Of a DNA stretch of 64,000 nt, positions 423 through 64,000 are shown in pieces. The translations under genes and the position numbers were made by a program. The notes under the pieces are model-generated. The model made no database searches. It saw nothing but the letters and a program-made list of their open reading frames with translations, and was not told the DNA's origin. Position 1 is the stretch's first letter. Every line of letters begins with the position of its first letter. Source of the DNA: Ruditapes philippinarum (taxonomy: Eukaryota); assembly GCF_026571515.1 (NCBI RefSeq), contig NW_026855648.1, forward strand, positions 186,001 to 250,000. Direction: 5' to 3'.

Positions 423-433
423 GTATGTTTGTA

Positions 434-13592: not shown

Positions 13593-14867
13593 ATGTACGA
13601 CAAAATTTTGTATGCTTACACAACCATGGTCATAACATTGTCCAGTAATTTATGTTCCAGTTTGAATATTACAGACGCCAACTTTCTCTATTCTAAGTTG
13701 TTTAAGAATTACAACAAAAACATTCTGCCTTTACAAAATCAATGTGAAGCTGTCGATGTCAGTATGTACATGTATTTGTCGAGTATAAACAGTTTTGATG
13801 AATTGTCTGGTGAACTATCATTCAGCGTTCTTTTTAATTTCACTTGGAGGGAAGAGCGAATAAATTGGTCAGTTGACGATTATGGCGGGAAAACGTCGCT
13901 GCTTTTTGCGCCGGAAGATATGTGGAAGCCTAAAATATTCGTTCGTGAATCTGTCGATAATATGGGAGAAATTGGGAAACTATCTGACATGTTGAGGATA
14001 ACATATGACGGTTTCGTTGTGTGGACAATTGGAGAGGTTCTTAAGGTTGTTTGCCCAGTAGATGTTACATTCTTCCCTTTTGATAGCCAAAAATGTCCAG
14101 TTACTTTGACAACTGTGACAGTGAGGTCGGAGGAAATGAAAATCAAGACATTGTCATCGTCTGTTGACACGGTATTCTTGATGAATAACAGTCAGTGGAG
14201 CTACGTCAGCAGCAGGATATTTAGTTTTTCTGAACCGACCAGACAATCTGGAACACTTCTTGAAATTTCATTGAAGCGAAGAAGCGAATTTTACGTTATT
14301 TACCTTATAATTCCATTAGTATTTCTTGGAAAAATAAACAATCTCGTCTTTGCCATACCGGCATTTGCAGGCGAAAGAAATTCTGTGGCAATAACTTCTT
14401 TCTTATCATTTGCTGTGTATATGCAAATTGTCAACAGCAGCGTTCCACAAAGTTCCAAACCGATAGCGTATATTTATTACTATCTGTTGTTTTTACTTAT
14501 ATACAGTTCATACATCATGTTTGCTTGCATTGTGTCTTTGCGTATCTATGACAAGCAAGGAAAGGTTCCTGCATGTGTAGAAAATCTAGTCAGTACTTTA
14601 AGATTCTGGTGCTGTAAACAAAGAAGAAGACCACTTGATAAAATAAACTCTCTCTACCGCTCCGATTCACAAACTGACATTTCTGAAACTGAGCAAGACA
14701 ATACTGACGTGAAACCGAATCTTGAAGACAAATTCGAGGATAAAGAGGTTACTTGGACGCTTGTTGGAAAAACGTTTGATATATATTGTGGAGTTTTCAA
14801 CTTTATTATTTTTATTACTTTTACCTGGTCGTCATTTATCAACTTATATCTTAACCAAAGTTTATAA
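13593..14867 (+). CDS. Cys-loop ligand-gated ion channel subunit, nAChR-like, non-alpha, subfamily B (divergent); intronless CDS (gene 1)
   Basis: 424 aa. Signal peptide, WKP loop A, Cys-loop CPVDVTFFPFDSQKC, four TM helices, M2 GERNSVAITSFLSF. Splice acceptor tttcAG at 13565-13566 in the 5' UTR. Confidence 0.93.
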   Translation: MYDKILYAYTTMVITLSSNLCSSLNITDANFLYSKLFKNYNKNILPLQNQCEAVDVSMYMYLSSINSFDELSGELSFSVLFNFTWREERINWSVDDYGGKTSLLFAPEDMWKPKIFVRESVDNMGEIGKLSDMLRITYDGFVVWTIGEVLKVVCPVDVTFFPFDSQKCPVTLTTVTVRSEEMKIKTLSSSVDTVFLMNNSQWSYVSSRIFSFSEPTRQSGTLLEISLKRRSEFYVIYLIIPLVFLGKINNLVFAIPAFAGERNSVAITSFLSFAVYMQIVNSSVPQSSKPIAYIYYYLLFLLIYSSYIMFACIVSLRIYDKQGKVPACVENLVSTLRFWCCKQRRRPLDKINSLYRSDSQTDISETEQDNTDVKPNLEDKFEDKEVTWTLVGKTFDIYCGVFNFIIFITFTWSSFINLYLNQSL

Positions 14868-15239
14868 TATTCCGAAGTTTTGTCTAAGCAATGATAAAAA
14901 ATGATAAAGTATACTTTTCATCGTGACATACATATTTTAAATTATGTTTTATTTTGCAAATCAACATATATAAATTTGTGACAGCAAATGTATATAGTGT
15001 AGCATTATTTAGGAAGTGAATTGATCAGATTTTACGATATGCATTACACCCAAAAAATGAAATTGAAATTTATCTTATGATGTACTATGTCTAAAGGCAT
15101 TAATTCAAATTGTTTATTGTTATTATTTGTTATTGTTTATACCCATTTATGACATTTACCTGTTTGTTATAAATGACTTAAATTATTATGTTTCTATGGT
15201 AAAAACTCTTTTAGTGAGATATTGCATTGTATTATTTAT

Positions 15240-15760
15240 TTATCTTCTTTGTTTCCGCCAACTCTACCAGAAATTACTTCTTATCCTTTGCGAATACAAA
15301 AGACAAAACAATTATATTACTATAGCTAGGCGCACTCAGTTAAACAATGCATCCTTTTTACCATCCTTAGAATTAAAGAATACCATCGACCCAGGTATAC
15401 GAAACCCTCCAACACATAACATGTTTAAATCTAGGCTTAAAACCTGTTTAAAGCACCAACAGTTCCGAAATATTTTCTTCAAAGCCAGAGAAACGTTTAT
15501 GAAATAATTGCAGTAATTCAAATAACGATTAATGTAATAATAATTTGCGAGAAGACCTTTTAATCAATGTGATTTTGTGATTGAAAATGCCAAGTATTGT
15601 TATCGTTACGTCGAACAACCAATAATACTCTTTCGAGAAACTCGATCTTATATCATCTATTTAACATTGACGCACAATTTTGTGGTCGCGAAACTTTTGA
15701 ATACGAAGTTAACGTTGTCATTTTCGAATCTATTGACGACCAATCGTTTTGATAATAATT
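15240..15760 (+). mobile_element. 3' fragment of a CR1-clade LINE (ORF2 C-terminus)
   Basis: RRTQLNNASFLPS..IRNPPTHNMFKSRLK matches the RT..SFxP..WN.L...IRN..S...FK..LK signature of CR1/L2 ORF2 ends. Confidence 0.65.
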
Positions 15761-17170: not shown

Positions 17171-17448
17171 GTAAGATATATTGTTCTCCTGGAAATTGCA
17201 GTTTAGAGATTTATAGATGAATTAAATTTTGTCATTCTACCGATTTATGAATATAAGATATCTTGGTATACTTAGATTTCTTTCATATTTGGTGGGAACA
17301 TTTGTTAATCGAGATAATCCAATATTTCTTTTTTAAACAATTTTGAGAAACAATTTCAATGGGTTTTCAATTTATTAACCAATACCAAATTTCAGCTGCT
17401 TTTTTAATGTGCAATTGACAATTTCAGATTAATATCTTTAATTTTCAG
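17171..17448 (+). other. Predicted 5' UTR intron of gene 2
   Basis: Donor AAG|GTAAGA at 17171 and acceptor ttttcAG at 17447-17448, 49 nt before the ATG. Confidence 0.55.
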
Positions 17449-17497
17449 ATATGTACTACATGTTACTTCAAGAATCCTATTAGCGTACATTGCTATA

Positions 17498-18838
17498 ATG
17501 AAAAATAAGTCTTGTTCTGCTAACAAGTCTATTGCGGTACTTATTCTGATCGTTTTAGCAGATATACCGGTGTCACCTCTCAATGTATCTGAAGCAGATA
17601 ATCTCTACACAAAGCTATTAAATGGTTATAATAAAAGGCTTTTGCCTGTCACTAATCAAAGCGGACCAGCTCATGTTGGTGTCTATATATATTTACTTAG
17701 TATCAATAAGTTTGATGAACTCTCTGGCGAGTTAGCTCTCACTTTAATTTTCAATTTCACATGGAGGGAAGAGCGCATGTCATGGTCTCCTGACGACTTC
17801 GACAGTAAAGCATCTCTTCTTATGTCACCAGAAGATGTATGGCGACCTAAAGCATTTGTTCGTGAATCATTCGACAATATTCAAGAAATAGGTAACGGGT
17901 CTGAAATGGTACGGATTACTTATGAGGGAATTGTTGTTTGGACACTTGGTTCTGTAACACGAGTTACATGTCCTGTGGATGTGACATTTTTTCCATTTGA
18001 CATTCAATCTTGTTCAATAACACTGACCACTCTTACAGTAAGAAGTGAGGACTTAACGTTTCATTCAATGGAACCTTCAGCCGATATAAGATACTGGGCT
18101 AACAACAGTCGATGGGAGTTCCAGAAAAGCATAATTCACAGCTATGCTATACGAGATGGACCATCTGGTCTTGTTTTAACTATAACATTGAAACGACGTA
18201 GCGAGTTTTACATAATTTACATAGTTGTACCGTTAGTTTTCCTTGGTGGAATGAATAACCTTGTGTTTTACATGCCGGCTTCATTTGGGGAGCGCACTTC
18301 AGTTGCAATTACGGCCTTTCTTTCATTTGCTGTATACATGCAAATTGTAAACAATAATGTTCCGCAAAGCTCGTCGCCAATAGCTTACATATATTATTAT
18401 CTGATGTTTCTTTTGTTATATAGCTCGTACATTACATTTGCTTGCATCGTGTCGATGCGAATATATGACAGGAAAGGCAAAGTTCCGGTATTCACAAAAT
18501 ACCTCGTTATCTGTTTAAAATGCATGTGTTTCAGAAGAATGTGTAAGAAGAGGAAAGTAAAAGATCTAAAGCCAAAATTGCCAGATTGTACAATGGAAAC
18601 AAATATTGACGGCGAGGAAAGTTATGGTGATGAATGCAAGCAAGTAAAGTCAAAGGATGAACACGCAAATGAACAAGAAAACGATGAAATAACTTGGACA
18701 ATAGTTGGAAAAACATTTGATATGTATTGTTCTGGATTCAATTTTCTAATTTATTGGGTAGTTACTGGTGTTACATTATTAAGTTTGTATCTTAACGCTG
18801 AATTTTTGAAATCATTCTCTCTTGAAAAGCACTATTAA
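17498..18838 (+). CDS. Cys-loop LGIC subunit, nAChR-like, non-alpha, subfamily B; intronless CDS (gene 2)
   Basis: 446 aa. Signal peptide, Cys-loop CPVDVTFFPFDIQSC, M2 GERTSVAITAFLSFAVYMQ, M4. Confidence 0.95.
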   Translation: MKNKSCSANKSIAVLILIVLADIPVSPLNVSEADNLYTKLLNGYNKRLLPVTNQSGPAHVGVYIYLLSINKFDELSGELALTLIFNFTWREERMSWSPDDFDSKASLLMSPEDVWRPKAFVRESFDNIQEIGNGSEMVRITYEGIVVWTLGSVTRVTCPVDVTFFPFDIQSCSITLTTLTVRSEDLTFHSMEPSADIRYWANNSRWEFQKSIIHSYAIRDGPSGLVLTITLKRRSEFYIIYIVVPLVFLGGMNNLVFYMPASFGERTSVAITAFLSFAVYMQIVNNNVPQSSSPIAYIYYYLMFLLLYSSYITFACIVSMRIYDRKGKVPVFTKYLVICLKCMCFRRMCKKRKVKDLKPKLPDCTMETNIDGEESYGDECKQVKSKDEHANEQENDEITWTIVGKTFDMYCSGFNFLIYWVVTGVTLLSLYLNAEFLKSFSLEKHY

Positions 18839-21800: not shown

Positions 21801-21849
21801 AAAGTACGTGGCAACTTTTTGACAGCCTCATAACACCTGCTTGTTGTTA

Positions 21850-22050: not shown

Positions 22051-23289
22051 AGATCGATGTGTTCATACGTAAATGACGTCAAGTCAATACATACGAATGG
22101 CAGTGCAGCATCATTTTTTTTCTGAGTCGCAGTTAAGACGTCACGGGTATGTGATGATAAGTCACATGTTACTATAAATATTAACAAATTTAACAAATAT
22201 TTCAACTTGTTATGAATGTCATATGACCGATTATGAGTTTTGTGACACGGGATCATAATCGGCCCGCTTAACATAAGCGCGTGAAAAATCGGTCAAATGT
22301 CAACGCAGTCTAGGCGGGGTTTATAGTAATGATGACTAGATTTTAAGACAAGTTTAACTGAAACGCAAATAATCCTTTATAAATAATGAATCTCAGGCTG
22401 AAGTCCTTGGGGCCATAATTTATTAAGCAAACCAATATTAACCTGCCGGTCCTACTCTGCCGTGTTTTAACCTCTTATTACGTACAGGTATCAGATTTTG
22501 TAAGGGTTCTTAAATCAGTTTAGAAAAGTCATGACCGGGCATAGATTTATACAATTAAATATTGTTTGCTGGCTATTAACACATACAACGGGTCCATAAT
22601 GATCACTTAATGTGTACTTTCAAAATATTGGAACTGTAATTATTGATTATGATTCCATACCTGAACTGTTCTATAAATGTTTATCAATATTTCAATTTCA
22701 CCATTCTTTCCTTTAACAATGGACTGACAATAATACAGTTCTAGTTTACGTAGCGCGTGATTGAACTTTTTGAACGGCTTTTATTATTTGGTTTATCGTC
22801 AGTCAATGGTTTGAGTATTCAAGAAAAAACACTAGTTATGTTAGCCCTGCAATTATGTTTTAATAATTACACGTAAATATGTTTGTGGAAAAAAACAACA
22901 ACAATAACAGCAGCAACAACAAAATGGAAAACAGTCTCTCACTTATTTGGAATAAATATTTCTTTTGCATTTGCATTGCAAATCTAAGGATATATCTCTA
23001 CAATGCCAGTTTATTACTGAAAATATATTTGAATACATCAGCAATATAAAGTGAATCGGGAATGCAGTTTACCGTTTGTTTACCAAAATGTGAGTTCAAC
23101 ATCTTATTTTGTGAATGAATAAATGACAGACTAAATTTCTTAATCGCTAATTGTTTTTCACGTGCATTTTTGGTACATCTGATAATTATTTATCATAAAA
23201 AGCCGAAGGTGACAGAAACCTGCAAACATTCAATTCCCCTTTAGCTTAAAAGTCATGATGAATATTGTGAAATATACTTGTTGTTAATT

Positions 23290-23319
23290 TTTATACGATG
23301 ATGATAAAATAAGTCAGTT
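23290..23319 (+). promoter_or_regulatory. Candidate TATA-like plus Inr (TCAGTT) core promoter of gene 3
   Basis: TTTATAC about 24 nt before TCAGTT (23314-23319). Same spacing is conserved before gene 5 (36098) and gene 9 (58054). Confidence 0.4.
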
Positions 23320-23349
23320 GAAACAATAAAAATCATGTTTTAAGCTGCG

Positions 23350-24618
23350 ATGAAGACCATAATTACAATGGATTACAAACTATTAATCGTGAACTTTTTA
23401 CTATTTCGACTTGAATACATTCACTGCTCAAATATTACACAGGTCGAAAGTTTATACACAAATTTATTCCAGAATTATAACAGGAAACTTTTTCCATTAA
23501 TAAATCACAACAATTCAATGGAAATAAATTTCACGATAGGAATCGTAAGTATAAATAATTTCGATGAGCTGTCTGGTGAAATAGAACTTACAATGTATTT
23601 CACTTTGCAATGGACTGATGAAAACTTGGTATGGACACCATCTCAATATGGCGGCAAATCGGTGTTGTTAGTAGCTCCAGAAGACATTTGGCGACCACAA
23701 CTTTATCTTCTACAATCATATGACACACTCCAGGAGATAAGTAACAATTCAGTCATGGCACGATTATTCTCGAATGGCCAAGTCATGTGGAATATTGGAA
23801 GTGTTTTGAAAATTGTTTGTTCTGTTGACGTGACGTATTTTCCTTTTGATACCCAGACATGTTTATTAATGGTTTCAGGCTGGGCCTACACAAACGAGGA
23901 AGTGTTGTTTTTCGTGAATGATGCAAAAGTAAGTGAAGATTATTTTTACAACAATAGTCAATGGATACTTCAGTCGGCAACGTCACAGAACTATTATGAT
24001 ATAATATCATCATTTCCACCGACGATTTTTGTGATACTACAACTACAAAGGCGAAGTGATTTTTTTGTAGTCTACATAATATTTCCAATGGTGTTCCTTG
24101 GCCTTATAAATAATCTTGTGTTTGTTATGCCTGCAAATTCTGGAGAGAGAACATCAGTTGCTATAACAACATTTTTGTCATTTATTGTTTTTATGCAAAT
24201 GATAAATTCGATTGTTCCGGAGAGTTCAGAACCTATGGCTTATATATATTATTATATTCTTTTTCTATTGGTTTATAGCTCACTCATTTTATTTTTGTGT
24301 ATATGCTCGTTATGTATCTATGACAAGGACACACCAGTTCCTCCGTCCATAGAAAAGATGATTTATTGTTTTCGATGTTGGTATTTCAAGAAAAACAAAG
24401 ACAAAGTAACACCTGAGAGGAGAGCATCCATTTTGTCTGAGCAAGTTGACGTAAAAAGCATTAACGAAAAGATATCATTCAGTCAACATGTTGATGATAC
24501 TCCTTTAGTGACTTGGATATTGGTTGGCAAGACATTTGATTTCTGCTGCTATGTTTTTCTGTTGTTGACATATTTGGCGGTAACCATTCATACGTTCGTA
24601 AAATTATATTTTAACTAG
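23350..24618 (+). CDS. Cys-loop LGIC subunit, nAChR-like, non-alpha, subfamily A; intronless (gene 3)
   Basis: 422 aa. Cys-loop CSVDVTYFPFDTQTC, loop B SGWAY, M2 GERTSVAITTFLSFIVFMQ. Confidence 0.95.
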   Translation: MKTIITMDYKLLIVNFLLFRLEYIHCSNITQVESLYTNLFQNYNRKLFPLINHNNSMEINFTIGIVSINNFDELSGEIELTMYFTLQWTDENLVWTPSQYGGKSVLLVAPEDIWRPQLYLLQSYDTLQEISNNSVMARLFSNGQVMWNIGSVLKIVCSVDVTYFPFDTQTCLLMVSGWAYTNEEVLFFVNDAKVSEDYFYNNSQWILQSATSQNYYDIISSFPPTIFVILQLQRRSDFFVVYIIFPMVFLGLINNLVFVMPANSGERTSVAITTFLSFIVFMQMINSIVPESSEPMAYIYYYILFLLVYSSLILFLCICSLCIYDKDTPVPPSIEKMIYCFRCWYFKKNKDKVTPERRASILSEQVDVKSINEKISFSQHVDDTPLVTWILVGKTFDFCCYVFLLLTYLAVTIHTFVKLYFN

Positions 24619-24644
24619 TTTCTGAATATCTTTTATATACATTT

Positions 24645-30706: not shown

Positions 30707-30775
30707 TTACACTGCTATACATCAAATGGCCGTTTGACACGCGTTAAAATCAAATTCTTATTGTTTTATATGGTA

Positions 30776-32098: not shown

Positions 32099-32122
32099 TT
32101 TCGAATGTATTCATTTAAAACC

Positions 32123-46595: not shown

Positions 46596-46858
46596 ATATC
46601 ATTTTGTTTAAACGATGTGTATGTCAGTTTACCAAACTTAGAGATCAATTCATAGTATCGTTCGTGAATCTGGAACGCATAGATGTATATCTTGTATATC
46701 TTAAACATGGAAGGTGACCAGATATCATAATGCACGAAAGTTGGACAACGGCTGCGAATATTATATTATTCTGTAATCAAGTGATAATTTTGTTTAGTGT
46801 AAAAATAGTTGATATAATTCACACGATGATTAAGTGTCAATTAAAATAGAAGTTGAAC

Positions 46859-48130: not shown

Positions 48131-51100
48131 AAACATTTATATGCATTGATATGAAATGTTTTGACAAAGTTTCTCGCTCCGATATTTTCTCTATTTTTTA
48201 AAAATCATATTGTTTGATATTACAAAAATACATACATTTTATATTTTCTTTTTATAATAGTTTATACGGCAAATATATTTATATATCATTTCAAAATGTG
48301 TCTTGTGTATACTCTCAAATGGTGTAAAATGTAAATACCGATGTAAATAGAACCAAATAGCATGTTTGTATTTTTGCTTTTATTCTTCAAATACATATTG
48401 TTTTCTTCCCAGAAACATTTCAGTGTAAGAAGTTAAACTGCTTCATAATCATTACAATTTCTAAGCTTCCTTCATACAATGGCGATTATTTCTAACGGCA
48501 GGGAAACATTTCAAAAAGTATACTTGGGTTTTACCTAAAGTTGAAATGGAGAAAAGAACATATCAACATAGGCCGGGGAGTGACATCCACCAAACACATC
48601 CATCGACAATACTCCGCTACACAAGGCTATCTGTATCCAGCCAGCAGGACAACAAATAAAACAGGAGAGGGTGACAATAAGATTAGTAAAGTCAGGAAAA
48701 ATGTAATGAGAATATGAAAAACCTAAAGGCTGCAATTGATATACCAAAATAGATGATATTGAATTACAGGGACAAGGGTGTATGAGTAGTGTATTAGGAG
48801 TTGATGGGGGCTAATGTTGAAAATTGGGAAGAGAGGGAAATACTTTCGGCGGCAAATTATAACTATGAAGTTAACAAGAACATAGGTGTACAGCCATGGA
48901 ACGGTAAGTAAGACAACCACAACTGGGCTGTTTAAACTTGTCAAAGGTCCATAAAACTACATTCTTAGGCTGGAAGGCAACACAACAAGAAAATCACCAA
49001 CACGGGCCCGACCAATCAATGCAGAAAACGAAAACTAAACTATTCTGTCACAATTGGTTTAAGAACTGCCCCTCATAGAGTGTCCCTCTTGGCCCATCAG
49101 ATGTAATTAAAGCGCAGTATTCAACTGTAAAAGGGTTAAATACTTACTATACAGTATGTTTCAATATATTTGGGTCATAATTTATTTTCATGAAATGTTT
49201 GGTAGTTTTAGTAAAAAGCAACGGGAAAATGTCAAGGACCCAAACTCTTACGTATTTTATATTGTTCTCGTTGATTAAGAGTAAAATGAAATCTGGCATA
49301 ATCTAGTAATAATTATTCGGTGTGATTGACAAATAAAGTAAGCTAAAAATCTGTTATCATATTTCATTTCACATGCGTGATAATTGTTATTTTAAGTGTA
49401 AGGGGAATAAACTAGAGCGATATCATTGATTTGTTTTGAAGAGGAAACATTCGTTATTGTGTTATTGTTTATCACTATCAAAGTTTGCTAGTGTTCTCCG
49501 CTCTATAATCAAATGTATAGATCATTTGGGAATATATATCTGATCACAAATTAATTTTCTCTTTCAAAACAATATTTCACATTATTGATCAAAGCATTTC
49601 AGTCAAACTTCATTTCTCCTAGTAGAATCATCAATTCACACGGTGACAATATAAACGAAGCTGTTCATATTGTAACAATGTAAACTGATGGAACGTAAAC
49701 AAATATAAGATCTCAGGAGATTATGTTTAACTCATTAAAATAAGGAATGGCGGTAAAATAATCTATTTAGGAATCCATAATAACAAATCATTGATCAGCA
49801 TTGTCAATTTCTGGTCCTACAATAATTATAAAGTTTAAATAACAATGGAAGTAATTATATTGACATTCGAATGAAAAATAATGATATTGAAAATGAATTA
49901 ATTTTACAACTTATCTATCAAAGTGATCGGATTATTATTGTAATCTCATTGATACTGTATTGAATTTAATTGACATGCGTATGGTCTGGCTATGGCATAA
50001 ACAATATTCACACTTATCCATACATTTAAAAAATCTTTTTGGAAATCGGATACTTTCCAACTAAGAATGATTTTGATTGAGCCTCTTCATAGACGGAAGT
50101 GGGTAAGTGCAAGCTACCGTCCACGCCCCCCCCTAGCACCGGTTTAAGAAGTTTACAATGATATAAGTATTATACAGTCATAATCTTTGGATGCACATGA
50201 CAATCGTCTTTTGGTTCACTTGATATCAGCGTTCATTCTACGTAAAGTCCATCAAATGTGTTACTTACTAAATGAAAAATGCAGACACCGTTTGATTGAG
50301 TCTATTCACGCTGGATGATGGAAATGTGATCTAACTAACTGATGAAAAAGTTTTCTAATGTAGTTCTTAAACAAGCCGTCGTATAAATTTACAACTTGTG
50401 TTGAACTTGAGCAGTGTGTGAAGTCGGGGCGTACAATAATAATTCTTACAAAAATGAGTTTGGTATTTATCATTGTTATTTGAAGTATACTCGTTTCAAT
50501 TTTTTATTTCTGAAAAGCAGGCAAGAAAATTTATTATTTAAGTACATGTATAATTACAATAATTTTTATTTTATGTTTTTATTTTTACTTTCTACCATTT
50601 TGAAGATAGAAATCATAGATAACATTAAAAACATTTTTTTCATTTCAAGATTCTTAATAGGAGCATCGTATTTAAATAAAAGGAACAACCGTAGTGGAAC
50701 TTATGTATTTTATTTATCATTATTCAATTTGTTATATATTATAAATGTAAATATATAAAGATATTTTACGTCGAAAAATATATATATTATTCTAGTAAAA
50801 TGTTTATGATGCAATTGACGGTATTTTACCTGTACGAGCTTTAAACACATCATAACCATCTAAATCGTTCTGTAATTAATAAATATATTTTAATTAAAAT
50901 GCCAATTATTGAACCGCTTGGGAATTCCCAATAAATCAAAGCTAAATATCTAGTAGGAATAACAGAATATCTTGTTCTACGCTATAGAAGACAGTATAAG
51001 AATAAACTTATCCGTAGCAATAGCAGCTAACATATGATATCCGAGATATAAATTGTTAATTGGTCTAGGCCTTATAGAAATATAATGACCTAACTGGAAA

Positions 51101-52336
51101 CTTAAATGACGCTTTCATTATATTAACAATGTCGTAAGCTCAGTTTGATTGAGCCTGTTTATGGCGTATATAAGTTAGATTTCGGAACTAGTTATTGTAT
51201 CGTACAAATAACTGTGTTGCAGATTATTTACGATAAAACTAAAAAATGAAACAATGTTTGCTCAAACATGTGCTTGCATTATTGTTATACTCAGCTTAAA
51301 GATAAATATGTTCTATGAAACTGAATATCCATTCACATTCAGTTCCAGAAGACACTTGGTGATCCCGTATCCGACCACTAAATAACTGCCAAAATAATGA
51401 TGCTCTAAATTACTATAAAAACATGTTACTTCTTTAGTTTTGGGGTTAATGTATAAAACACACACTCTATTGCTCGAATATATCTGTTTTAGCAATATTT
51501 CATTTATGAAATTTAGAGTTAGTAATCTCTTTTACTATAAAAACTGTAACGAACGTCTTTTTCTAAATTCTATTTGTTTCTAAATTCAAATTTCACAATT
51601 TTCGTGTTTTAAATGTTTAATTCTGCTTAAGCCGGTGCTAGGGGGTATGGACGGTCGCTTGTACTTTCAAGTACCGCCCATGAACAGACTCGCTCAAACC
51701 GAGCCTGTAACATTTTCAAATTATGTCATTTTGTGTGTTTACGTTTTTATTCTATCTGATTTGGATTATGACAGGGCGCCAAAAAGGAATGCATGTAGTC
51801 ATAAGTGGCTGAAGTAACTAAGAAAAATGCCTGGTAATATTGATAAAAATGTCGTTCGTAGTAATGGTTTAAAAAGTGTGACACATCGGTCGAAGGCAAT
51901 TTAATGGCTTTATGTTTGTTTTATTCAAGTATAATAACAGTTTTGTTAACAGTCAATATTCTAACAGATAGTTATAATGAATGGCTTTTAATCACGCATC
52001 ATCAATAACAATCCTTTATGAGACCAAACTCAAATAACGTGCTCTTAAGTAAATATTTTTAAAAAGGTAAAGAGGAAAGGATTTTATAAACGATAAAAAT
52101 GTAGTTTGAAAATGTAATTGCACGTGGCTTGATTAAGTAGGTATTTAAGACAATCAATAAATAAATGCCAATCATTATTTGTTTCTTCGTCATTAAATTA
52201 TAAAAAAATACAAATATACCTAGACTTATTAAAACAAACGTGTGAAGTAAAGTTTTAAATTTAAACAACTATGACCAAATGTTTAAGTTATTTCCACTTT
52301 TATCTGAAGCTCCCTTTTACACTCGTATGAAATAAA

Positions 52337-52574
52337 TGAGCCGCTTCACGACAAAACGAACATAATGGGTTTGCGACCAGCATGGATCCAGACCAGCTGC
52401 GCATCCGCGCAGTCCGATCAGGATCAAAGCTGTTCGCTTACAAACTATATTACAAGTAGAGAAACTGATAGCGAACAGCATGGATCATGATCAGACTGCG
52501 CGGAAGCGCAGGCTGGTCTGGATCCATGCTGGTCGCAAACCCATTATGTTGGTTTTGTCGTGACGCGGCTTCAA
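52337..52574. mobile_element. Palindromic MITE (~240 bp)
   Basis: ~100-bp inverted arms (gagccgc..cataatgggtttgcgaccagcatggatccagaccag / ctggtctggatccatgctggtcgcaaacccattatg..gcggct). Confidence 0.9.
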
Positions 52575-52845
52575 TGGACATGTTGTAATTTAACAAATAA
52601 CGTCGTTACCTGTCAATACTTTTTAATGATACTTTCCATAGAAACATAAATCTTTTTAAATAACAACTACAAAAACCACCTTAAAATCTTAACACATGAA
52701 TAGCAGATAAGTAATAACTCCTTAAAAATAACCAGTGCAATACATGTATTTTTAAAGCAAAGTTGTAAAATCACAGTAACAAAGAAATGATTATCAGCAT
52801 CATTTGCCTTAATATAACGATGAATCATTTTAGCATTTTAACAGT

Positions 52846-54111
52846 TTAAAGTTTGCGGTTATAATACAAATTGCTGAATGTATTGGCTGTCATAACAATA
52901 AATATAAAATACAGAATTAGGAAACAATACAAATCGAATGTTTTGCCAACCGTTTTCCATGTCACAGAGGGAGTTTCATTTTCTTTTTCTGTATTTTCAT
53001 TGATCTTGTTATGTTTCATCTCAATCTCTTCTGAAACAAATGACATTTTCCGTTCAGGCTTAACAACAGCAATTTTCTTTCGTTTAATCCACCAGCAACG
53101 AAGAATGTACACCAATTTTACAATTGCCGACGGAACGGGAGCATCCCTGTCATGTATACGTAATGAAAGTATACATAGAAAGAGGATAACTGAGCTGTAT
53201 ATCAATAGAAAAAGGACATAAAAATAAATGTAAGCCATTGGGTCAGAACTCTGGGAACAGTCGAATTTATCATTTGCATAAAAACAATGAATGACAAAAA
53301 TGTGGTTATAGCCACAGATGTTCTTTCCCCAGAATTCGCAGGCATAATGAACACCAGGTTATTCATACAACTTAAAAAACACCATCGGAACAATTATGTA
53401 AACTACAAAGAAATCACTTCTTCTTTTCAATGAAATTTTAATGTTTAATGATGGTGGAAAGCTTGGGGCGACGACAGCACTTCTATTATCCGCAGTTGCA
53501 GACGATATTATCCATTGACTATTCTGGCTTAAAAAATCTTTGTTTATCATACTCTCTGTTGTATAAAACAACACTTCATCGATTGTATACGCCCATCCTG
53601 AAATCGTCACGTAACAATCTTGCGTGTCAAAGGGAAAGTAAGTGACATCAACCGAGCAAACTAGTTTTAAAACATTCCCTGGGTTCCATATAATTTTACC
53701 GCTTGAAAGCAATCGCATCAGCATTGATACATTGGTAATTTCTTGAATTCTGTCAAAAGATTGTAGTACAAACAACTGTGGGTGCCACACATCTTCCGGT
53801 GGAATAAGAAGATTCGATTTCCCGCCAAATTCAGACGGTGTCCAGCTTAGTCTTTCATCACTCCATTGCATGTAAAATAACATGGTAATTTCTATCTCAC
53901 CAGACAATTCATCAAACTTATTGATACTCACAATCCCTATTGTACAAGCAATTTTTACAGTGTCATTATGATTTAACAGAGGAAAAAGTTTCCTATTGTA
54001 GTTCTTGAACAAGTTGTCGTGTAAACTTCTAACCTGTGTTGAATTTGAGCAGAAGATGAATTCCAACCGAATAAACATAATACTGACGATTAGGATTTTG
54101 GTGTTCATCAT
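52846..54111 (-). pseudogene. Divergent subfamily A Cys-loop LGIC gene (gene 8), broken by two 1-nt homopolymer indels; pseudogene or assembly error
   Basis: ORFs 53359-54138, 53202-53393 and 52846-53238 join into one full subunit. ATG at 54111, +1 T in the run at 53374-53379, -1 near 53253-53255. Confidence 0.85.
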
Positions 54112-54161
54112 GATTGCTGGTACAAAATATATGTTCAACGTTATAATCAGATGTCACATAT

Positions 54162-55620
54162 CTGGAAAAGAAAGAATAGATACATCGATTCAATATGAAC
54201 ACATTTAATACAAACTACAAACATTTTATCATCAATTAGAATTATGAAATATCCAGACCACACTTCTATTTCCTCAAGCGCCTGACGGTATGGCTATTTA
54301 TGGTCTTGTTAAACATTTCACATGGTCATTTTTAATTATTTAAGTATGCGTTATTGTCCGTAGAGCTCTTTGAAATGTTTACAATATAATAAAGGAAAAC
54401 CACGGGGGACTATTCACAAACAAAACTTTATTCTTTCCCATTACTGTTATTAAAATTGACAAATGTGTTTGTAAATGTTTGTTTTATATGACAAATCTTA
54501 ATTTGCACCATTGTACAAGTTCAGTATATCAATACAATCTAAATGTGGTTTTGAGTTATGGAAAAAAATGTTTATATTTCAATTTATATGAATGGTTGAA
54601 GATAGTTTGCAAACAAAAAGGATAACATCACCTAAATGGTTTTGTAATTGAAAGGCCAAATTGCACCATAACAACACAGAATTGCATGCTCCAGTACACT
54701 ACAAACGCAAAATGAAAAGGCTTTTTATAGGATGATAATTCCATAACAACAAGAGAGATATTTTGAGCATGTGCGTTATGCGTAGGGCAAAAAGCGAAGT
54801 CGATGTGATGAGCGGAAGAATAGTTATTTTAGATTAAACAATTTTTTATAAAAGTTATGATCTTACTCAATTTTATAGAATGTATATAATGCAATGAAAT
54901 GGTTAGAAAGGGTAGTTTTCTGTTTGTTTGTTTGTTTGTTTGTTTGTTTTTTTCATTCCCATAAAAGCTTCAATTATGGGCGATCGATTCTAAAATAAGA
55001 ACTTTCATCTTTAATTAAATCTATTGACTTTTTGTCCTTCGTGCATTGCGCATGCGCAAAAAATAATGCATCGCCTTGAATTTACATGGCAAAGAAGATC
55101 GTTGTAAAATGGTATGTAGATATGGCAGACAAAATAAAACCAAGGATTAAGATCTGATATTGACACATAAATGATTAATAATATTTATATTGATACAAAG
55201 CATTGTTAAGTAATATATTTATATCAAATTACACATATCAGACAGAGAAAGGGACCTGTCTACGAATGCACCAAACTCCAAACAGAATTTCCATATTGCT
55301 CCAAAATACGAAATAGATATAAATCAAACCCACGAGATTACCAATTCATTCATGTGTCCAAACATGAATTTGATTGAATATATGCGATGTGCACATTGTC
55401 TACATACAATGTATATCTAATTATAACTACATGTATAGCTATAACAAAATACAGTTTAAAATATTTTGTCAGATTTTTTTGTCTTAGAATATATAAATGA
55501 TTGATATTCTGTGATATTGATATTTTCATATATCTTACCTGTGCATATATTCACAGATAATACACGTAAATAAAACGTTCTATCTCAAAATAGTAGAAGT
55601 TAACTGTCCTTTTATATAAA
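54162..55620 (-). promoter_or_regulatory. Predicted TATA box, non-coding first exon and 5' UTR intron of gene 8
   Basis: Minus-strand TATATAAAAG ~55610-55619, donor CAG|GTAAGA at 55538, acceptor tctttcttttccAG at 54162. Confidence 0.55.
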
Positions 55621-58083
55621 CATTTTTTCACATTATTATCCCTCATCTCAAAAATTAAACTTCTTTGTCATTATATCTATAATTCATCGAAAACTAATTA
55701 AGTAATTATCATCATTCAGTCTATTTAATCTACTCGAACTAATTGTTTCTCGTGAACCTATCACGTGATCTGTTTCTCTTAGTATCTATTTATTTAAAGT
55801 CAGTATTAAATCGAACAAACGGCCATGCATAGTGATAGCTTGAAATTTGTACATCAATAATCTCTCCGATAATTTCTGGAAAGTCCGATAACATTTCAAG
55901 GAGTCTGTGGCTTATACAACATAGCACTGTTAAATTCTATGATTTATATCATTAAAATCCTTTAGAAACTAACAAAATGTAAAACAATGTTTAATTAATT
56001 TCTTTAATGAAAAAAAAACAACAACAAAAAACTTGAATAATTCATTGATGTCGTCATGTGGGTGATACCACGACAGTCCAATCTAATGAATTATTGTTAA
56101 TAATTACTGTACTGTGAACACAATATCAAATTGAAAAAGCGGACTCCCTAAAGAATACTCAAACCGGCAAAATTGTAAATGTTGAAGGCTTTGTTTGAAT
56201 GAACCTGTTCATTCTGTTGATAGTAATGGTAACCTCAACTAGTGTCGTATGATGAATCATGAACGTGACCCGAGTAGAGCTAGAACATACGATCCCTCGG
56301 TTGAGAGACAGAGGGCCACAGCCCACCTTAATTTAACTAACAAAAATAATTAGTATTGATTCATTCTAGGACAACTTCAAAATTATCACAAGAACTCAAG
56401 GACATTTGAAAAAGTCGGGTATAGATTTGTTAGCCGGGGCTGTATGTTTACAACTTTGCATTATAATTAGGTAATAATGTATGGCAAGTATGAAGACCAG
56501 AAATAATCAGGTCAATACGTGCGCATTGGCAAATAATTTAGAAATTTTACTAAAAACTACCAGATTTTTAGCAACAGGCGATGAAAAAATGGACTATGAA
56601 TTTTTACACATGAAACAATATGTAAGGCAAGCTTAATCATTAAAGTGTAATATTTAGCACCTAAAATTCACTGTTTAAAGATAATGATTATCATATTTGA
56701 CGAGTGTTTTTCTAATATATACAAATGTTATTCGACGAACTCCGAAGGCGGGGTTTATGGTAATGATACACTGATCAGTTTAACTGAAACGCAAAGAATC
56801 CCCCCTCCAGCTCCCAATAAAAATACAAAAATCCATAGCAGTTTGATAGAAACAAACTTGTAACTTGGTTCTACTAGTCTTTCGTACCATAAATGGAAAA
56901 AAAACTCTGTGTCTGTTCTCTGGGTTTTTAACGACATAAAAATTTAAGTTTTTGAAAAAAAATGTCTATAATTTCTATTTCGTTTAGCTTAAACTAAAAT
57001 AAATAATTGAAATAATAATAAATAATGAATCTCGGGCTGAAGAACACGGGGCCATTATCTGATTAGCAAAACAATTTTCACCGGTCCTACTCTGCCGTGT
57101 TTTAACCTCTTATAACGTCTACATGTGAGATTTTGTAAGGGTTCTTAATTAAATCAATTTTGAACATGGCGACACTACCTATTAACGCATTAAAACGGTC
57201 CCTAATGATCACTCAATGTGTGCTCTCAACATTATGTTTATTGATCGTGATTCCATATCTAAACTTTTCTATTAATGTTTATCAATATTACAATTGGACT
57301 GATGGACTAACAATAATTCAGTTCTTGTTTTTGTAGCACGTGATTGAAATATTTGAACAGGTATTATTATATATTCCATAGCCAGTCATTGCTTCTATTG
57401 AGTATCCCAGAAAAAACATTTAATTCTGAAAGCCTCGTGAATTAGTTGGACTTTTTTAATCAATTCACTTAAACATATTTGAAAAAAAGTTAAGAATTCA
57501 GAGGATATATATAACAATGTCATTTTTATTTCTGAAAATATTTTAAAACAACAAAAGTAGTATACGAACTGAATCGGAAATATAGTTAACTGTTAGTTGT
57601 CGACATCTGAATGTATGCCTTGTTTTGTGCATAATAAAATGTCGGACTATACAGTATTTCATATATCGTTCCTTGCTTTACACGTGTATTTTGTGAAAGC
57701 GTTTCCGGATTATAATACATGTGAAAGCGTGACAATGTAACTATGAAAAGATATTCATGATAGATCTAGATCTTTTATCATTTGTCAATGACGTGAACCA
57801 GAACCCGAAGATATAAATTACAGTTTAGCGTCTTCTTGAACAGATAAGTACCAAAGTTTGTCTATCAGACGACCATGGAAGTATTCAAGTTCTACATCAG
57901 TTTTTAATATTTTGGTACATCTGGTTATTATTTATCATACTACGCCAAATGTGACAGAAACCTGTAAATATTTAATTCTCTTTAAACTTAAAAGTCGTTT
58001 GAAATATTGTGAAATATATTTGTTGTACATTTATACGATGGCGATACAATAAGTCAGTTGAAACAATAGATAACATAATTAAT

Positions 58084-59344
58084 ATGGATTCCAAGCTATT
58101 AATCGTGACTTTTTTACTTTTCAGCTTGAATACATTCACTGCTCAAATATGACACAGGTCGAAGGTTAATACACAAACTTGTTCCAGAACTATAACAAGA
58201 AACTTTTTCCATTGATGAATCACAACAATTCAATGGAAATAAATGTCACGGTAGGTATTAGAAGTATAAATAATTTCGATGAGCTGTCTGGCGAAATTGA
58301 ACTTACAATGTATTTCACTTTACAATGGACTGATGAAAACTTGATATGGACACCTTCTCAATATGGTGGCAAGTCGGTGTTGTTAGTAGCTTCAGAAGAC
58401 ATTTGGCGACCACAACTTTATCTTCTACAATCATATGACACACTCCAGGAGATAACGAATGTATCGTTGATGGCACGGTTGTTGTCGAATGGCCTCGTCA
58501 TGTGGAATATTGGAAGTGTTTTGAAAAGTGTTTGTTCTGTTGACGTGACGTATTTTCCTTTTGATACCCTGACATGTGTATTAATGGTTTCAGGCTGGGC
58601 TTACACAAACGACGAAGTGTTACTTATCGTCAATAATGCTAAAGTAAATGAAGATTCTTTTTCCAACAATAGTCAATGGATACTTCAGTCGGCAACGTCA
58701 CAGAACAATTATGATATAATATCATCATTTCCCCCGACGATTTTTGTGATACTTAAACTAAAAAGACGAAGTGATTTATTTGTAGTGTACATAATATTTC
58801 CAATGGTGTTCTTTGGCCTTATAAATAATCTTGTGTTTGTTATGCCTGCGAATTCTGGAGAGAGGACATCAGTTGCTATAACAGCATTTTTGTCGTTTAT
58901 TGTTTTTATGCAAATGATAAATTCGATTGTTCCTGAGAGTTCAGAACCTATGGCTTATATATATATTATTATATACTTTTTCTATTGGTTTATAGCTCAC
59001 TCATTTTATTTCTATGTATATGCTCGTTATGTATCTATGACAAGGACACACCAGTTCCTCAGTCCATAGAAAAGATGATTTATTGTTTTCGATGTTGGTA
59101 TTTCAAGAGAAACAAAGACAAAGTAACACCTGTGAGGAAAGCATCCATTTTGTCTGAGCAAGTTGACGTTAAAAGCACGAACGAAAAGTTATCATTCAGT
59201 CAAAATGATGAGGATTCTCCTTTAATGACTTGGGTAACGGTTGGTAAGACATTTGATTCCTGCTGCTATGTTCTTTTGTTGATGACATATTTGGCGGTGA
59301 CCATTCACACATTCGTAAAATTGTATTTTAACTACAGTTGCTGA
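58084..59344 (+). pseudogene. Subfamily A Cys-loop LGIC pseudogene (gene 9)
   Basis: ATG 58084, -1 T at ~58118-58121, nonsense TTA>TAA at 58167-58169, +2 (AT) slippage at ~58955-58967. Confidence 0.9.
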
Positions 59345-62300: not shown

Positions 62301-63390
62301 TTACAAATAAAAAATAAAATAAAAAGGGGATGTATAGTGTTACGAAATCAAAAGAAACGCCTTGTGAAATGTTTCCCCTTTACGGTTAGTAAAATGTCAA
62401 TGATATCAATTGTTTACATTTTATAATATGAAATAATAATATATTATTAATATTGACATTTTTTCAACCTGGAGAAGAAAACAAAAAACACAAAAAGGAA
62501 AAAGTGCATGTCTGTTACCACCAATAATAGCTAATTAGATGCATCTTTTGGCTAAGCTCAATAGGCCAATACGGAAACAGAATATTTCGGCCCCAAACTA
62601 AATCGGCCCGAATCGAAAAATCGACCATTGGACGTGTCGGCCATTTTCCGCGAGACGTTTCGGCCCTACTATAGGCTAAAGCTTGATTGTATAAACAAAC
62701 AATTATGACACTTTAATTCCTTAATTAATTAAGAAAGTTTATTACAGTTATTCCTTAGAAAACATAATCTATTGAACTTTATTATCGTAGGTAGGATAAA
62801 CATGTTAACTGATTATACCATTTATTTTTATCATAGTAATTGATTGTGCATGTATAATACAACAGTTGTATACAGTATCAATTTAGGTTTTGTTAATTTA
62901 TATAGTATGTTTCTTTGTGTTAGGAATTGTGTCTTGGTAACTGTTGCAAGCAATGCTATATCAGCAGCAGCAAACAGGTCATTTATACATTGCTTAAGTA
63001 ACATTGTCATATAAAAAGTTTAATTGAATTGGATTCAATTTATCTTTCTTATATAATAATAAATTTTCATATAACTGACAAAAATATTATTTTACAGATT
63101 TTATGAGATAATCTTAAATGTTTCTTCTTACAGAAAGCAAATGATCATCATGTGATGAACTTAATGTAAAATGTAAAATGATAAATAATCTCTAATCTTA
63201 TTCATCAAACAAAATATGTCTATGATCACTATGATATTTGCCTTTTTGATATTAGCAAATAATTTTCTTTTGATTAGTCTAAACATAGTAGAATTTTTTT
63301 TTAATTTATCAAATTCTCTATTAAACTACCATACATCAAATTGTCATTAAACACGCGGCAAAATCAAAATGTTATTAGTTTTAAATGATA

Positions 63391-64000
63391 TTATCGGAAT
63401 GATTTCAAAATTTCTGCATTTGAATACAGACATATTATTGTAAAACCGGTAATTGTCCAATACCCCAAACAATTAAACCATGAACAGTAGGTATCAAATG
63501 TTTCTCCGACATTTGTCCAAGTTAGATCATCATCTTCCTTGGAGCCTTCCTTTAACTGATCTTTATCAGATTCAACTCGTTCACAATCAACATTAGTGTT
63601 TTGACCATTGCTTAAATCTGTTTCTACTACATTGATCACTCTTGTGGGCGTCTTGTCGTTACCAATACATATTTTTCCAATTTTGCACATCCTTTTAAAA
63701 CACATACATCTTAAACAATATACAAGATATTTAGTAACGACCGGTATTTTCCCTTTCCTGTCATATATTCGCATAGACACTATGCACATAAACATTATGT
63801 ATGAACTATACAATAAAAGAAACATTAAATAGTAATAAATATATGCAATAGGAGATGAACTTTGTGGAACATTGTTGTTTACTATCTGCATGTAGACTGC
63901 AAATGATAAGAACGCTGTGATAGCGACCGATGTCCTCTCTCCAGACGAAGCTGGCATAGTAAACACCAGATTATTCATCCCTCCAAGAAACACTAATGGT
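63391..64000 (-). CDS. Cys-loop LGIC subunit, subfamily B, 3' part only (gene 10; continues beyond the window)
   Basis: Open frame to the window edge. M1-M4 nearly identical to genes 4 and 6. Confidence 0.9.
   Translation of the reverse strand, partial: PLVFLGGMNNLVFTMPASSGERTSVAITAFLSFAVYMQIVNNNVPQSSSPIAYIYYYLMFLLLYSSYIMFMCIVSMRIYDRKGKIPVVTKYLVYCLRCMCFKRMCKIGKICIGNDKTPTRVINVVETDLSNGQNTNVDCERVESDKDQLKEGSKEDDDLTWTNVGETFDTYCSWFNCLGYWTITGFTIICLYSNAEILKSFR

What the first reader, a model, noticed from the sequence alone, without database searches (positions are those of the whole stretch)
13593..64000. Tandem array of intronless nAChR-like channels that lack the acetylcholine site: candidate bivalve chemosensory ionotropic receptor system
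Seen: ten paralogs plus a fragment in 50 kb, all with intronless CDS. None of the nine whose extracellular domain is in the window has the loop C vicinal CC (A: YDIISSFPP; B: FAIPDGPS). The loop A WxPD..Y motif becomes WRPQLYLL (A) or WRPKTFVR (B). The loop D Trp becomes Y, H, L or I. The loop B Trp is kept only in A. The Cys-loop and pore are intact. Established: bivalves have expanded, often intronless nAChR-like genes, and cephalopod chemotactile receptors are tandem, intronless, ACh-insensitive nAChR derivatives. Inference: this is an orphan, diversifying receptor family for non-ACh, possibly environmental, ligands. It could be related to or convergent with chemotactile receptors.
Basis: partly seen in the sequence, partly recalled or inferred. 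Interest (0 to 1): 0.85.

Follow-up and report, generated by a model that had tools for sequence, protein, structure and literature searches.

The report
Clam cluster of orphan nicotinic-like channels
A 61-kb stretch of the Manila clam genome holds twelve single-exon genes (two of them broken) for nicotinic-receptor-like ion channels that have lost the usual acetylcholine-binding residues; it is a real but ordinary example of an already published bivalve gene expansion, and its ligand and any sensory role remain untested.

Summary
The window (Ruditapes philippinarum, contig C4135:186001-250000) holds ten Cys-loop channel paralogs plus a 5' relic. Seven are intact single ORFs, one is cut by the window end, and two are broken. 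The cluster runs on to twelve genes over 60.6 kb, in three subtypes (A, B, C). It grew by segmental duplication of convergent gene pairs.

- **Binding site:** none of the genes has the loop C Cys-Cys. Loop A Tyr and loop D Trp are replaced. Loop B Trp survives in A1, A2, both broken copies and C1, but not in A3, A4 or any B.
- **Pore:** G-E-R, Leu 9' and Val 13' are conserved across 55 family members, which predicts a cation channel.
- **Selection:** dN/dS is 0.27-0.59 overall between recent paralogs and 0.04-0.18 in TM1-3, so the proteins are constrained.

This is not special. Twenty of 20 other single-ORF paralogs sampled from other contigs also lack the Cys-Cys. The same scan flagged other such arrays in this genome (s1-811303, s1-803801). 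Bivalve intronless tandem nAChR expansions with degenerate ACh sites are published (Jiao 2019; MolluscaGenes 2026; Sun 2024).

Identity to octopus and squid chemotactile receptors (21-22%) is no higher than to vertebrate nAChRs. The chemosensory reading stays a hypothesis.

The parts
13593..14867 (+). B1: intact single-ORF Cys-loop channel gene (424 aa), the most divergent B-type copy
   Evidence: ORF. Pfam LBD 1.7e-38 and TM 1.6e-10. 53% identical to B3.
17498..18838 (+). B2: intact single-ORF gene (446 aa)
   Evidence: 65% identical to B3.
23350..24618 (+). A1: intact single-ORF gene (422 aa). Loop B Trp178 is kept; loop C has no Cys-Cys. This copy was modelled.
   Evidence: AF2 mean pLDDT 80.7 with four TM helices. 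VIA Z 29.0 to nAChR beta2.
30776..32098 (-). B3: intact single-ORF gene (440 aa), convergent partner of A1
36129..37388 (+). A2: intact single-ORF gene (419 aa), 90% identical to A1
   Evidence: It equals database protein P0001.
41412..42749 (-). B4: intact single-ORF gene (445 aa), 91% identical to B3
46859..48130 (+). A3: intact single-ORF gene (423 aa counted from the first ATG). Its loop B Trp is replaced by Arg.
50345..50479 (-). 5' relic of an A/C-type gene: signal peptide plus first helix only, about 48 codons
   Evidence: tblastn 47% identity, E 3e-07. Translation.
52846..54138 (-). psi-C: apparently broken C-type copy. The end of M1 through M2 is out of frame between two compensating frameshifts, with a TAA at 53359-53361. 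The shifted block is still open in the other frame, so the lesions need checking against reads.
   Evidence: The intact paralog C1 (= P0005) lies 20 kb downstream.
58084..59344 (+). psi-A: broken A-type copy. It has a frameshift in the signal peptide, a TAA at 58167-58169 where paralogs have Leu, and a frameshift in M3 inside an AT-rich run (58955-58979).
63391..64000 (-). B5: 3' part (M1 to stop) of an intact B-type gene cut by the window end. The full ORF is 440 aa and ends 713 bp beyond the window.
35098..56366 (.). First copy of a ~21-kb segmental duplication holding [A2, B4, A3, psi-C]. The second copy starts at 57051 and holds [psi-A, B5, A4, C1]. Noncoding DNA is 84-96% identical between copies. 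Each copy has lost a different gene.
   Evidence: Self-blastn of the window plus 20 kb.
23168..23349 (+). Conserved ~180-bp block directly upstream of the A-type start codons, with a TATA-like TTTATACGATG about 50 bp before the ATG. Putative compact promoter and 5' UTR; not verified.
   Evidence: The high-identity (~90%) match between the A1 and A2 loci begins here. Alignment of five upstream regions.

Best explanation
These genes encode subunits of cation-selective pentameric ligand-gated channels. They form one heterodont-clam branch of the published bivalve expansion of intronless, tandemly duplicated nAChR-like genes.

**Shown**
- The fold, the Cys-loop, four TM helices and a pore signature that barely varies (G-E-R at -2'/-1'/0', Leu 9' in all 55 sequences, Val 13' in 51).
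- Loss of the canonical acetylcholine-binding residues on both faces of the subunit interface.
- Purifying selection on the protein.
- Growth by segmental duplication of convergent A/B (or A/C) gene pairs, with birth-and-death turnover (two dead copies and one relic).

**Inferred**
- The channels open when a small molecule other than acetylcholine binds a remodelled inter-subunit pocket. That pocket is mostly aliphatic in A/C and carries Lys and Arg in loop A of B. Probability about 0.6.
- A-type and B-type subunits may co-assemble. Probability about 0.3.
- The ligand may be environmental and the cells sensory. Probability about 0.3.
For: - **Family and fold:** Pfam LBD and TM on every copy. 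Best solved relatives are nAChR subunits, E 1e-40 to 1e-43. AF2 pLDDT 80.7 with helices at 236-258, 266-288, 294-325 and 389-421. VIA Z 26.9-29.0 to nAChR beta2, epsilon, alpha7, gamma and 5-HT3A.
- **Binding site and pore:** residue mapping against muscle alpha1. Family-wide counts over 55 sequences show no loop C Cys-Cys, E -1' 55/55, L 9' 55/55 and V 13' 51/55. Loop D, the Tyr93 position and the Trp149 position are hypervariable.
- **Selection:** dN/dS is 0.27-0.59 overall for recent pairs and about 0.1 for old pairs. TM1-3 is 0.04-0.18 and the ICD 0.24-1.2.
- **Cluster structure:** the family is confined to one locus of twelve genes. Segmental duplication.
- **Phylogeny:** orthologous A/C and B clades in Mercenaria, with related sequences from Mya, Dreissena and Mactra inside the family.
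- **Genome context:** 582 candidate loci genome-wide (99 scored, most as a single open frame). 20 of 20 sampled lack the Cys-Cys and 19 of 20 keep GE[RK].
- **Literature:** PMC6896357 reports 99-217 nAChR genes per bivalve, intronless, in arrays of up to 12, with only 13 of 132 oyster genes keeping the principal site. PMC11592408 reports Neur_chan_LBD expanded in R. philippinarum and Mercenaria.
Against: - No expression or functional data could be obtained here.
- Absence of the Cys-Cys does not by itself exclude acetylcholine or amine binding. A1, A2 and C1 keep loop B Trp178, Tyr180 and aromatic residues at the loop D and loop C positions.
- Non-alpha nAChR subunits also lack the Cys-Cys, so a role as structural subunits of cholinergic receptors is not excluded.
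- The monomer model says nothing about which subunits assemble.
- Loop C alignment to alpha1 is uncertain.
Confidence: 0.7

Rival explanations
1. Environmental chemoreceptors. The channels sit in exposed epithelia (siphon tip, mantle edge, gill, palps) and are gated by waterborne or contact cues. They would be a bivalve counterpart of cephalopod chemotactile receptors, arisen independently.
For: - The evolutionary pattern (large tandem arrays, lineage-specific birth and death, a conserved pore with a hypervariable pocket) is typical of chemosensory families.
- The pocket is largely aliphatic or hydrophobic in A/C.
- Bivalve nAChR-like genes are most highly expressed in gills (PMC6896357).
- PMC13174522 raises the same idea for divergent molluscan clades.
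Against: - There are no expression data for these genes.
- There is no specific similarity to CRT1 or CRB1: 21-22% identity, the same as to vertebrate nAChRs.
- Recent paralogs show purifying rather than diversifying selection, and variable sites are not enriched in the binding loops.
Confidence: 0.3
2. Structural or accessory subunits. Like vertebrate muscle beta1 or neuronal alpha5/beta3, they would not bind agonist. They would co-assemble with canonical alpha subunits and tune cholinergic receptors, including non-neuronal ones that control gill cilia or haemocytes.
For: - The best PDB sequence hit for both A1 and B3 is the Torpedo beta chain.
- Both principal-face and complementary-face residues are lost, as in non-binding subunits.
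- Published links connect bivalve nAChRs to gill cilia and immunity (PMC5549309, PMC6896357).
Against: - Hundreds of such genes per genome, with fast lineage-specific turnover, is far more than a modulatory role needs.
- Scores to alpha, beta, gamma and delta subunits differ little.
Confidence: 0.2
3. Still amine-gated. A1, A2 and C1 would bind acetylcholine, choline or another quaternary or primary amine through cation-pi contact with the retained loop B Trp, in a non-canonical pocket as in 5-HT3 receptors, which also lack the Cys-Cys.
For: - Trp178, Tyr180, an aromatic residue at the loop D position (Tyr83) and a Phe in loop C are retained in A1 and A2.
- The annelid orphan Alpo4 lacks the Cys-Cys yet makes a cation-pi contact with a quaternary ammonium through its loop B Trp (PMC10338036).
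Against: - A3, A4 and all B copies lack the Trp. Only 26 of 55 family members keep it.
- Loop A Tyr is Leu or Arg.
- Alpo4 itself did not respond to acetylcholine or serotonin (PMC10338036).
Confidence: 0.15
4. Decaying retrocopies with no function.
For: - Two of the twelve copies are broken and one relic remains.
- Intron-poor bivalve nAChR genes more often show no expression (PMC6896357).
Against: - Ten copies have complete ORFs. dN/dS is well below 1, with TM1-3 at 0.04-0.18.
- Orthologs are conserved across Veneridae, Myida and Mactridae.
Confidence: 0.03

Closest known systems
Bivalve and lophotrochozoan intronless nAChR expansion (Jiao et al. 2019, PMC6896357; clade survey in MolluscaGenes 2026, PMC13174522)
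   Same: Single-exon genes in tandem arrays, with lineage-specific duplication. Most lack the alpha-type Cys-Cys and the conserved principal site, while the Cys-loop and pore are retained. Pseudogenes occur among them.
   Different: Nothing essential differs. This is an undescribed cluster in a different species, restricted to heterodont clams at 34% identity or more, with an alternating A/B pair arrangement.
Cephalopod chemotactile receptors (octopus CRT1, PDB 9e6b; squid CRB1, PDB 8eiz)
   Same: nAChR-derived fold (Z 22.3 and 22.6). Intronless and tandem, the canonical acetylcholine site is lost, and the channel is cationic.
   Different: Sequence identity is only 21-22%, no higher than to vertebrate nAChRs. 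Neither is among the 60 best PDB sequence hits. Clade membership, sensory expression and ligands are untested here. Recent paralogs show no sign of diversifying selection in the pocket.
Alpo4, orphan nAChR-like receptor of the annelid Alvinella pompejana (PDB 8bx5; PMC10338036)
   Same: A lophotrochozoan orphan without the loop C Cys-Cys. Similar fold (Z 24.1, 20% identity). Its ligand remains unknown despite screening.
   Different: Alpo4 keeps the full aromatic box (loops A, B, C and D). The clam proteins have lost most of it.
Vertebrate non-binding nAChR subunits (muscle beta1; neuronal alpha5 and beta3)
   Same: They lack the agonist-contacting residues and have a cationic pore. They give the best sequence scores (Torpedo beta, 153 and 140 bits).
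   Different: The vertebrate genes are single-copy, intron-rich and have a long intracellular domain. The clam genes are intronless, have a short ICD (about 60-85 residues) and belong to a family of hundreds.

Membership tests
[quoted passage not shown] | Extracellular beta-sandwich ligand-binding domain followed by a four-helix TM domain | tested here: met
   Pfam PF02931 and PF02932 above cut-off. AF2 model with four TM helices. Z 29.0 to nAChR beta2 over 351 residues.
[quoted passage not shown] | Cys-loop: two cysteines 13 residues apart with the FPFD motif | tested here: met
   C157 and C171 are invariant in 55 of 55 family sequences.
Cation-selective branch (nAChR / 5-HT3 type) | Glu at -1' without Pro at -2'; Leu 9' gate | tested here: met
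   G265-E266-R267 and L276 are invariant; V280 in 51 of 55. Selectivity itself was not measured.
Acetylcholine-gated nAChR (agonist-binding alpha subunit) | Vicinal Cys192-Cys193 in loop C | tested here: not met
   Absent in all nine ECDs of the window and in all 55 family members.
Acetylcholine-gated nAChR (agonist-binding alpha subunit) | Aromatic box: Tyr93, Trp149, Tyr190, Tyr198 | tested here: not met
   Tyr93 becomes Leu (A, C) or Arg (B). Trp149 is kept only in A1, A2, psi-A, psi-C and C1. By the HMMER alignment, Tyr190 becomes Ile and Tyr198 becomes Phe.
nAChR complementary (non-alpha, agonist-contacting) subunit | Loop D Trp55 | tested here: not met
   Y, H, L or I in the cluster. Trp in 1 of 55 family members.
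Acetylcholine-gated nAChR | Current evoked by acetylcholine or nicotine | not testable with these tools
   Needs electrophysiology.
Bivalve intronless tandem nAChR-like expansion (Jiao 2019) | Single-exon CDS in a tandem array, with lineage-specific paralogs in a bivalve genome | tested here: met
   Uninterrupted ORFs. Twelve genes in 60.6 kb. Ruditapes-specific A1-A4 and B3-B5 subclades. The species was identified through P0005 and the 491,392-bp contig.
Cephalopod chemotactile receptors | Membership of the CR (or CR-like) clade in a phylogeny | tested here: inconclusive
   No CR sequence could be fetched; two homolog searches found no cephalopod protein. The proxy is 21-22% identity to CRT1 and CRB1 against 20-26% to vertebrate nAChR and 5-HT3. 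CRs are absent from the top 60 PDB hits.
Cephalopod chemotactile receptors | Expression in sensory epithelium | not testable with these tools
Cephalopod chemotactile receptors | Binding-pocket residues under diversifying selection | tested here: not met
   ECD dN/dS is 0.19-0.54 between recent paralogs. Among the recent paralogs (A1-A4; B3-B5) variable sites are not enriched in loops A-F; a nominal p of 0.024 appears only when C1 is added to A. This is a pairwise test with few sequences; site models were not run.
Cephalopod chemotactile receptors | Gating by poorly soluble or hydrophobic compounds, with insensitivity to acetylcholine | not testable with these tools
   Needs heterologous expression.

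The most novel reading that the evidence does not exclude
The convergent A/B (and A/C) gene pairs, which were duplicated together as units, encode obligate partners of heteromeric channels. The A/C subunit would supply a Trp-containing principal face and the B subunit a Lys/Arg-bearing face. These channels would detect waterborne or contact cues in siphon, mantle-edge or gill epithelia. That would make them an independent bivalve invention of nAChR-derived ionotropic chemoreception, parallel to cephalopod chemotactile receptors.
Probability: 0.15. Interest if true: 0.75.

Novelty: new member of a known kind. Interest (0 to 1): 0.35.

Why it matters
Bivalves carry hundreds of orphan nicotinic-like channels whose ligands and roles are unknown. 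That is a genuine open question about how sessile filter feeders sense their surroundings.

This cluster is a compact and tractable example. It has ten intact genes in three subtypes, clear orthologs in other clams, and recent duplicates that differ at few pocket residues, such as Trp versus Arg in loop B between A1/A2 and A3/A4. If a ligand were found, it could serve as a test case.

By itself it adds no new principle. The expansion, the intronless tandem structure, the degenerate acetylcholine site and the idea of other ligands are all in the literature, and these genes are already annotated in NCBI.

Tried and rejected
3. **Phylogeny with cephalopod chemotactile receptors.**
   - Neither a single-protein search nor a broadened-profile search reached any cephalopod protein.
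   - PDB chain sequences cannot be fetched, and the van Giesen 2020 paper is not held.
   - I used structure-based identity as a proxy instead.
4. **Enrichment of paralog differences in binding loops.** Not significant for the recent paralogs (A1-A4, B3-B5) or for B1-B5. Only a nominal p of 0.024 appears when C1 is added to A.
5. **Gene-wide positive selection.** Rejected, since dN/dS is below 1 everywhere except the short intracellular loop of B3/B4/B5.
6. **Conserved Arg138 as a sign of a carboxylate ligand.**
   - Arg138 sits at the alpha7 Leu109 position and is Arg in 50 of 55 sequences.
   - I dropped the idea because, from my own knowledge (not checked here), Lymnaea AChBP has Arg104 at the equivalent loop E position and still binds acetylcholine.
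7. **Pseudogenes as introns.** Rejected. The breaks are frameshifts and stop codons inside otherwise colinear coding sequence.
8. **Model coordinates.** These are not available to scripts, so no pocket geometry was computed.
Full report
**What is there**

The window is G000:C4135:186001-250000 of a 1.41-Gb assembly. The database holds the window's own proteins on a 491,392-bp contig. The neighbouring paralog P0005, on the same contig, is named 'neuronal acetylcholine receptor subunit alpha-5-like [Ruditapes philippinarum]'. The organism is therefore the Manila clam.

ORF listing and tblastn with the A and B proteins find ten paralogous loci and one short relic between 13.6 and 64 kb.
- **Seven uninterrupted ORFs of 419-446 codons:**
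  - B1 at 13593-14867(+)
  - B2 at 17498-18838(+)
  - A1 at 23350-24618(+)
  - B3 at 30776-32098(-)
  - A2 at 36129-37388(+)
  - B4 at 41412-42749(-)
  - A3 at 46859-48130(+)
- **One copy cut by the window end:** B5 starts at 63391(-). It is complete (440 aa) once the next 10 kb are added.
- **Two broken copies:**
  - 52846-54138(-) is colinear with its intact paralog, but the end of M1 through M2 is out of frame between two compensating frameshifts and carries a TAA. The shifted block still reads as a perfect M2 in the other frame, so the lesions are either very recent or an assembly error.
  - 58084-59344(+) has a frameshift in the signal peptide, a TAA at 58167-58169 and a frameshift in M3.
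- **One relic:** 50345-50479(-) keeps only the signal peptide and first helix.

Beyond the window lie A4 and the intact C-type gene C1 (= P0005). Nothing follows in the next 10 kb. The whole cluster is twelve genes in 60.6 kb. No other locus in the genome exceeds 33% identity to A1.

**What the proteins are**

Every full-length copy has Pfam Neur_chan_LBD and Neur_chan_memb. The best solved relatives by sequence are nAChR subunits, led by the Torpedo beta chain (E 1e-43 for A1 and 5.5e-40 for B3).

An AlphaFold model of A1, built on 55 homologs, has mean pLDDT 80.7. It shows the beta-sandwich ECD, four TM helices and a disordered 349-383 loop. Against 48,161 PDB representatives the matches were:

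| Target | Z | % identity |
|---|---|---|
| nAChR beta2 | 29.0 | 20 |
| nAChR epsilon | 28.6 | 23 |
| nAChR alpha7 | 28.5 | 22 |
| nAChR gamma | 28.0 | 26 |
| 5-HT3A | 26.9 | 23 |
| Alpo4 | 24.1 | 20 |
| squid CRB1 | 22.6 | 22 |
| octopus CRT1 | 22.3 | 21 |

**Binding site and pore**

I mapped residues through the HMMER alignment to muscle alpha1 and the cluster alignment.
- **Loop A:** Trp86 and Pro88 are kept. Asp89 becomes Gln (A, C) or Lys (B). Tyr93 becomes Leu (A, C) or Arg (B).
- **Loop B:** Trp149 is kept in A1, A2, both broken copies and C1. It is Arg in A3 and A4, and Val, Leu or Phe in B.
- **Loop C:** it is short and has no Cys-Cys in any copy.
- **Loop D:** the Trp55 position is Tyr, His, Leu or Ile.

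Across 55 family members from several clams the picture is the same.
- Pocket positions are hypervariable. Trp149 is kept in only 26 of 55.
- The Cys-loop, G-E-R at -2'/-1'/0' and Leu 9' do not vary, and Val 13' is kept in 51 of 55. This predicts a cation channel with a normal gate.
- An Arg at the alpha7 Leu109 position is present in 50 of 55 sequences. I do not read a ligand class from it (see Tried and rejected).

**Evolution**

A and B are 40-43% identical, and C is 60% identical to A.

In a tree of the family, A/C and B fall in separate clades, each with a Mercenaria ortholog. Mya and Dreissena sequences lie near A/C, and a Mactra sequence lies near B. The split therefore predates the divergence of these clams, whereas A1-A4 and B3-B5 are Ruditapes-specific duplicates. 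The whole family is a supported clade nested among other single-ORF paralogs of the same genome.

Self-comparison shows a ~21-kb unit [A2, B4, A3, psi-C] duplicated in tandem as [psi-A, B5, A4, C1], with 84-96% identity in noncoding DNA. An older, related [A1, B3] unit is also present. Each young copy has lost a different gene, a plain birth-and-death pattern.

Pairwise dN/dS gives these values:
- 0.27-0.59 overall between recent paralogs (dS 0.07-0.31)
- about 0.1 between older pairs
- 0.04-0.18 in TM1-3
- 0.19-0.54 in the ECD
- 0.24-1.2 in the intracellular loop

The proteins are therefore constrained. Among the recent paralogs (A1-A4; B3-B5), sites that differ are not enriched in the six binding loops (p 0.28 and 0.83). 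Adding C1 to A gives a nominal p of 0.024.

**How ordinary it is**

The genome search returned 582 candidate loci. Ninety-nine were scored, most of them as a single open frame and many in arrays on other contigs. I fetched 20 of them from 20 contigs.
- All are single ORFs of 408-484 codons.
- All lack the loop C Cys-Cys and the loop A Tyr.
- About half keep the loop B Trp.
- 19 of 20 keep GE[RK].

Two other arrays of this kind were already flagged in this genome by the scan.

The literature already covers the phenomenon.
- Jiao et al. 2019 describe 99-217 nAChR genes in bivalves. These are largely intronless, sit in arrays of up to 12 genes, and include pseudogenes. Only 33 of 132 oyster genes have the Cys-Cys, and only 13 of those keep the full principal site. 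Expression is highest in gill. The authors suggest the genes bind diverse ligands.
- Sun et al. 2024 report Neur_chan_LBD and 'neuronal acetylcholine receptor' families expanded in R. philippinarum and Mercenaria.
- A 2026 preprint resolves 15 molluscan nAChR clades. These include divergent clades with pocket substitutions and a 'CR-like' clade reaching into bivalves. It raises an ionotropic chemosensory role for such clades.
- The annelid orphan Alpo4 is a solved precedent for a Cys-Cys-less lophotrochozoan receptor of unknown ligand.

**Relation to chemotactile receptors**

The resemblance is one of kind: nAChR-derived, intronless, tandem, with the canonical site lost. I found no sign of specific kinship.
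- Identity to CRT1 and CRB1 equals that to vertebrate receptors.
- Neither appears among the 60 best PDB sequence matches of A1 or B3.
- Two homolog searches found only bivalve relatives, one gastropod protein (26% identical to A1) and, in the second search, an alligator nAChR beta subunit.

I could not build a proper tree because no CR sequence could be obtained.

**What could not be done**

As a result there is no test of expression, transcript structure or synteny in Mercenaria, and no read-level check of the frameshifts.

**Verdict**

The genes are functional subunits of cation-selective Cys-loop channels that cannot bind acetylcholine in the canonical way. Their ligand is unknown. The chemosensory reading is reasonable and already voiced in the literature, but nothing here tests it. 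The cluster is a new member of a known, published kind.

Noticed in passing
window 10323-10922(-) and 11767-11988(-): Remains of an LTR retrotransposon just upstream of B1. There is an integrase fragment (Pfam rve 3.9e-06, Integrase_H2C2 5e-05, both below the curated cut-offs) and a weak reverse-transcriptase fragment (RVT_1 0.005).
   Followed up: partly
window 3324-4438; 426-919; 7186-7645: Tandem repeats. One has a 162-bp unit in 6.9 copies (92% matches), one a 23-bp unit in 21.5 copies, and one a 164-bp unit in 2.8 copies.
   Followed up: no
L003 4245-5819 (C4135:180245-181819): A satellite about 6 kb upstream of the window reads as a 524-codon open frame made of 8-residue repeats (VSPHLYTK-like, then SQSSSLYK-like). 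This is most likely a 24-bp tandem repeat rather than a gene.
   Followed up: no
window 35098-56366 versus 57051 onward: In the ~21-kb tandem duplication each copy has lost a different member. The C-type gene is broken in the first copy and the A-type gene in the second.
   Followed up: yes
window 53239-53375(-): The out-of-frame M1-M2 block of the broken C-type copy is fully open in the other frame and matches the intact paralog. Two compensating indels with no other damage could be an assembly error rather than a true pseudogene.
   Followed up: partly
window 23168-23349 and the equivalent stretches before A2, A3, psi-A and A4: A conserved block lies directly upstream of the A-type start codons, with a TATA-like motif about 50 bp before the ATG. 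No obvious polypyrimidine/AG acceptor is next to the ATG, which fits a compact promoter without a 5' intron. This is unverified.
   Followed up: partly
window 45996-46304(+) and L001 2498-2869(+): A 102-123-codon open frame recurs upstream of A3 and A4 inside the duplicated unit. It has no Pfam match.
   Followed up: partly
window 177-434(+): An 85-codon open frame at the window start could be an exon of an upstream gene. It has no Pfam match.
   Followed up: partly
loci L004-L023 (20 other contigs of G000): All 20 sampled single-ORF nAChR-like genes elsewhere in the genome lack the loop C Cys-Cys and the loop A Tyr, and 19 keep the GE[RK] pore motif. The loss of the canonical acetylcholine site is genome-wide in this expansion.
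   Followed up: yes
A2 alignment, loop C region (A1 residues 205-236): Many family members carry N-x-S/T sequons inside or next to the short loop C. This suggests a glycan near the pocket entrance.
   Followed up: no
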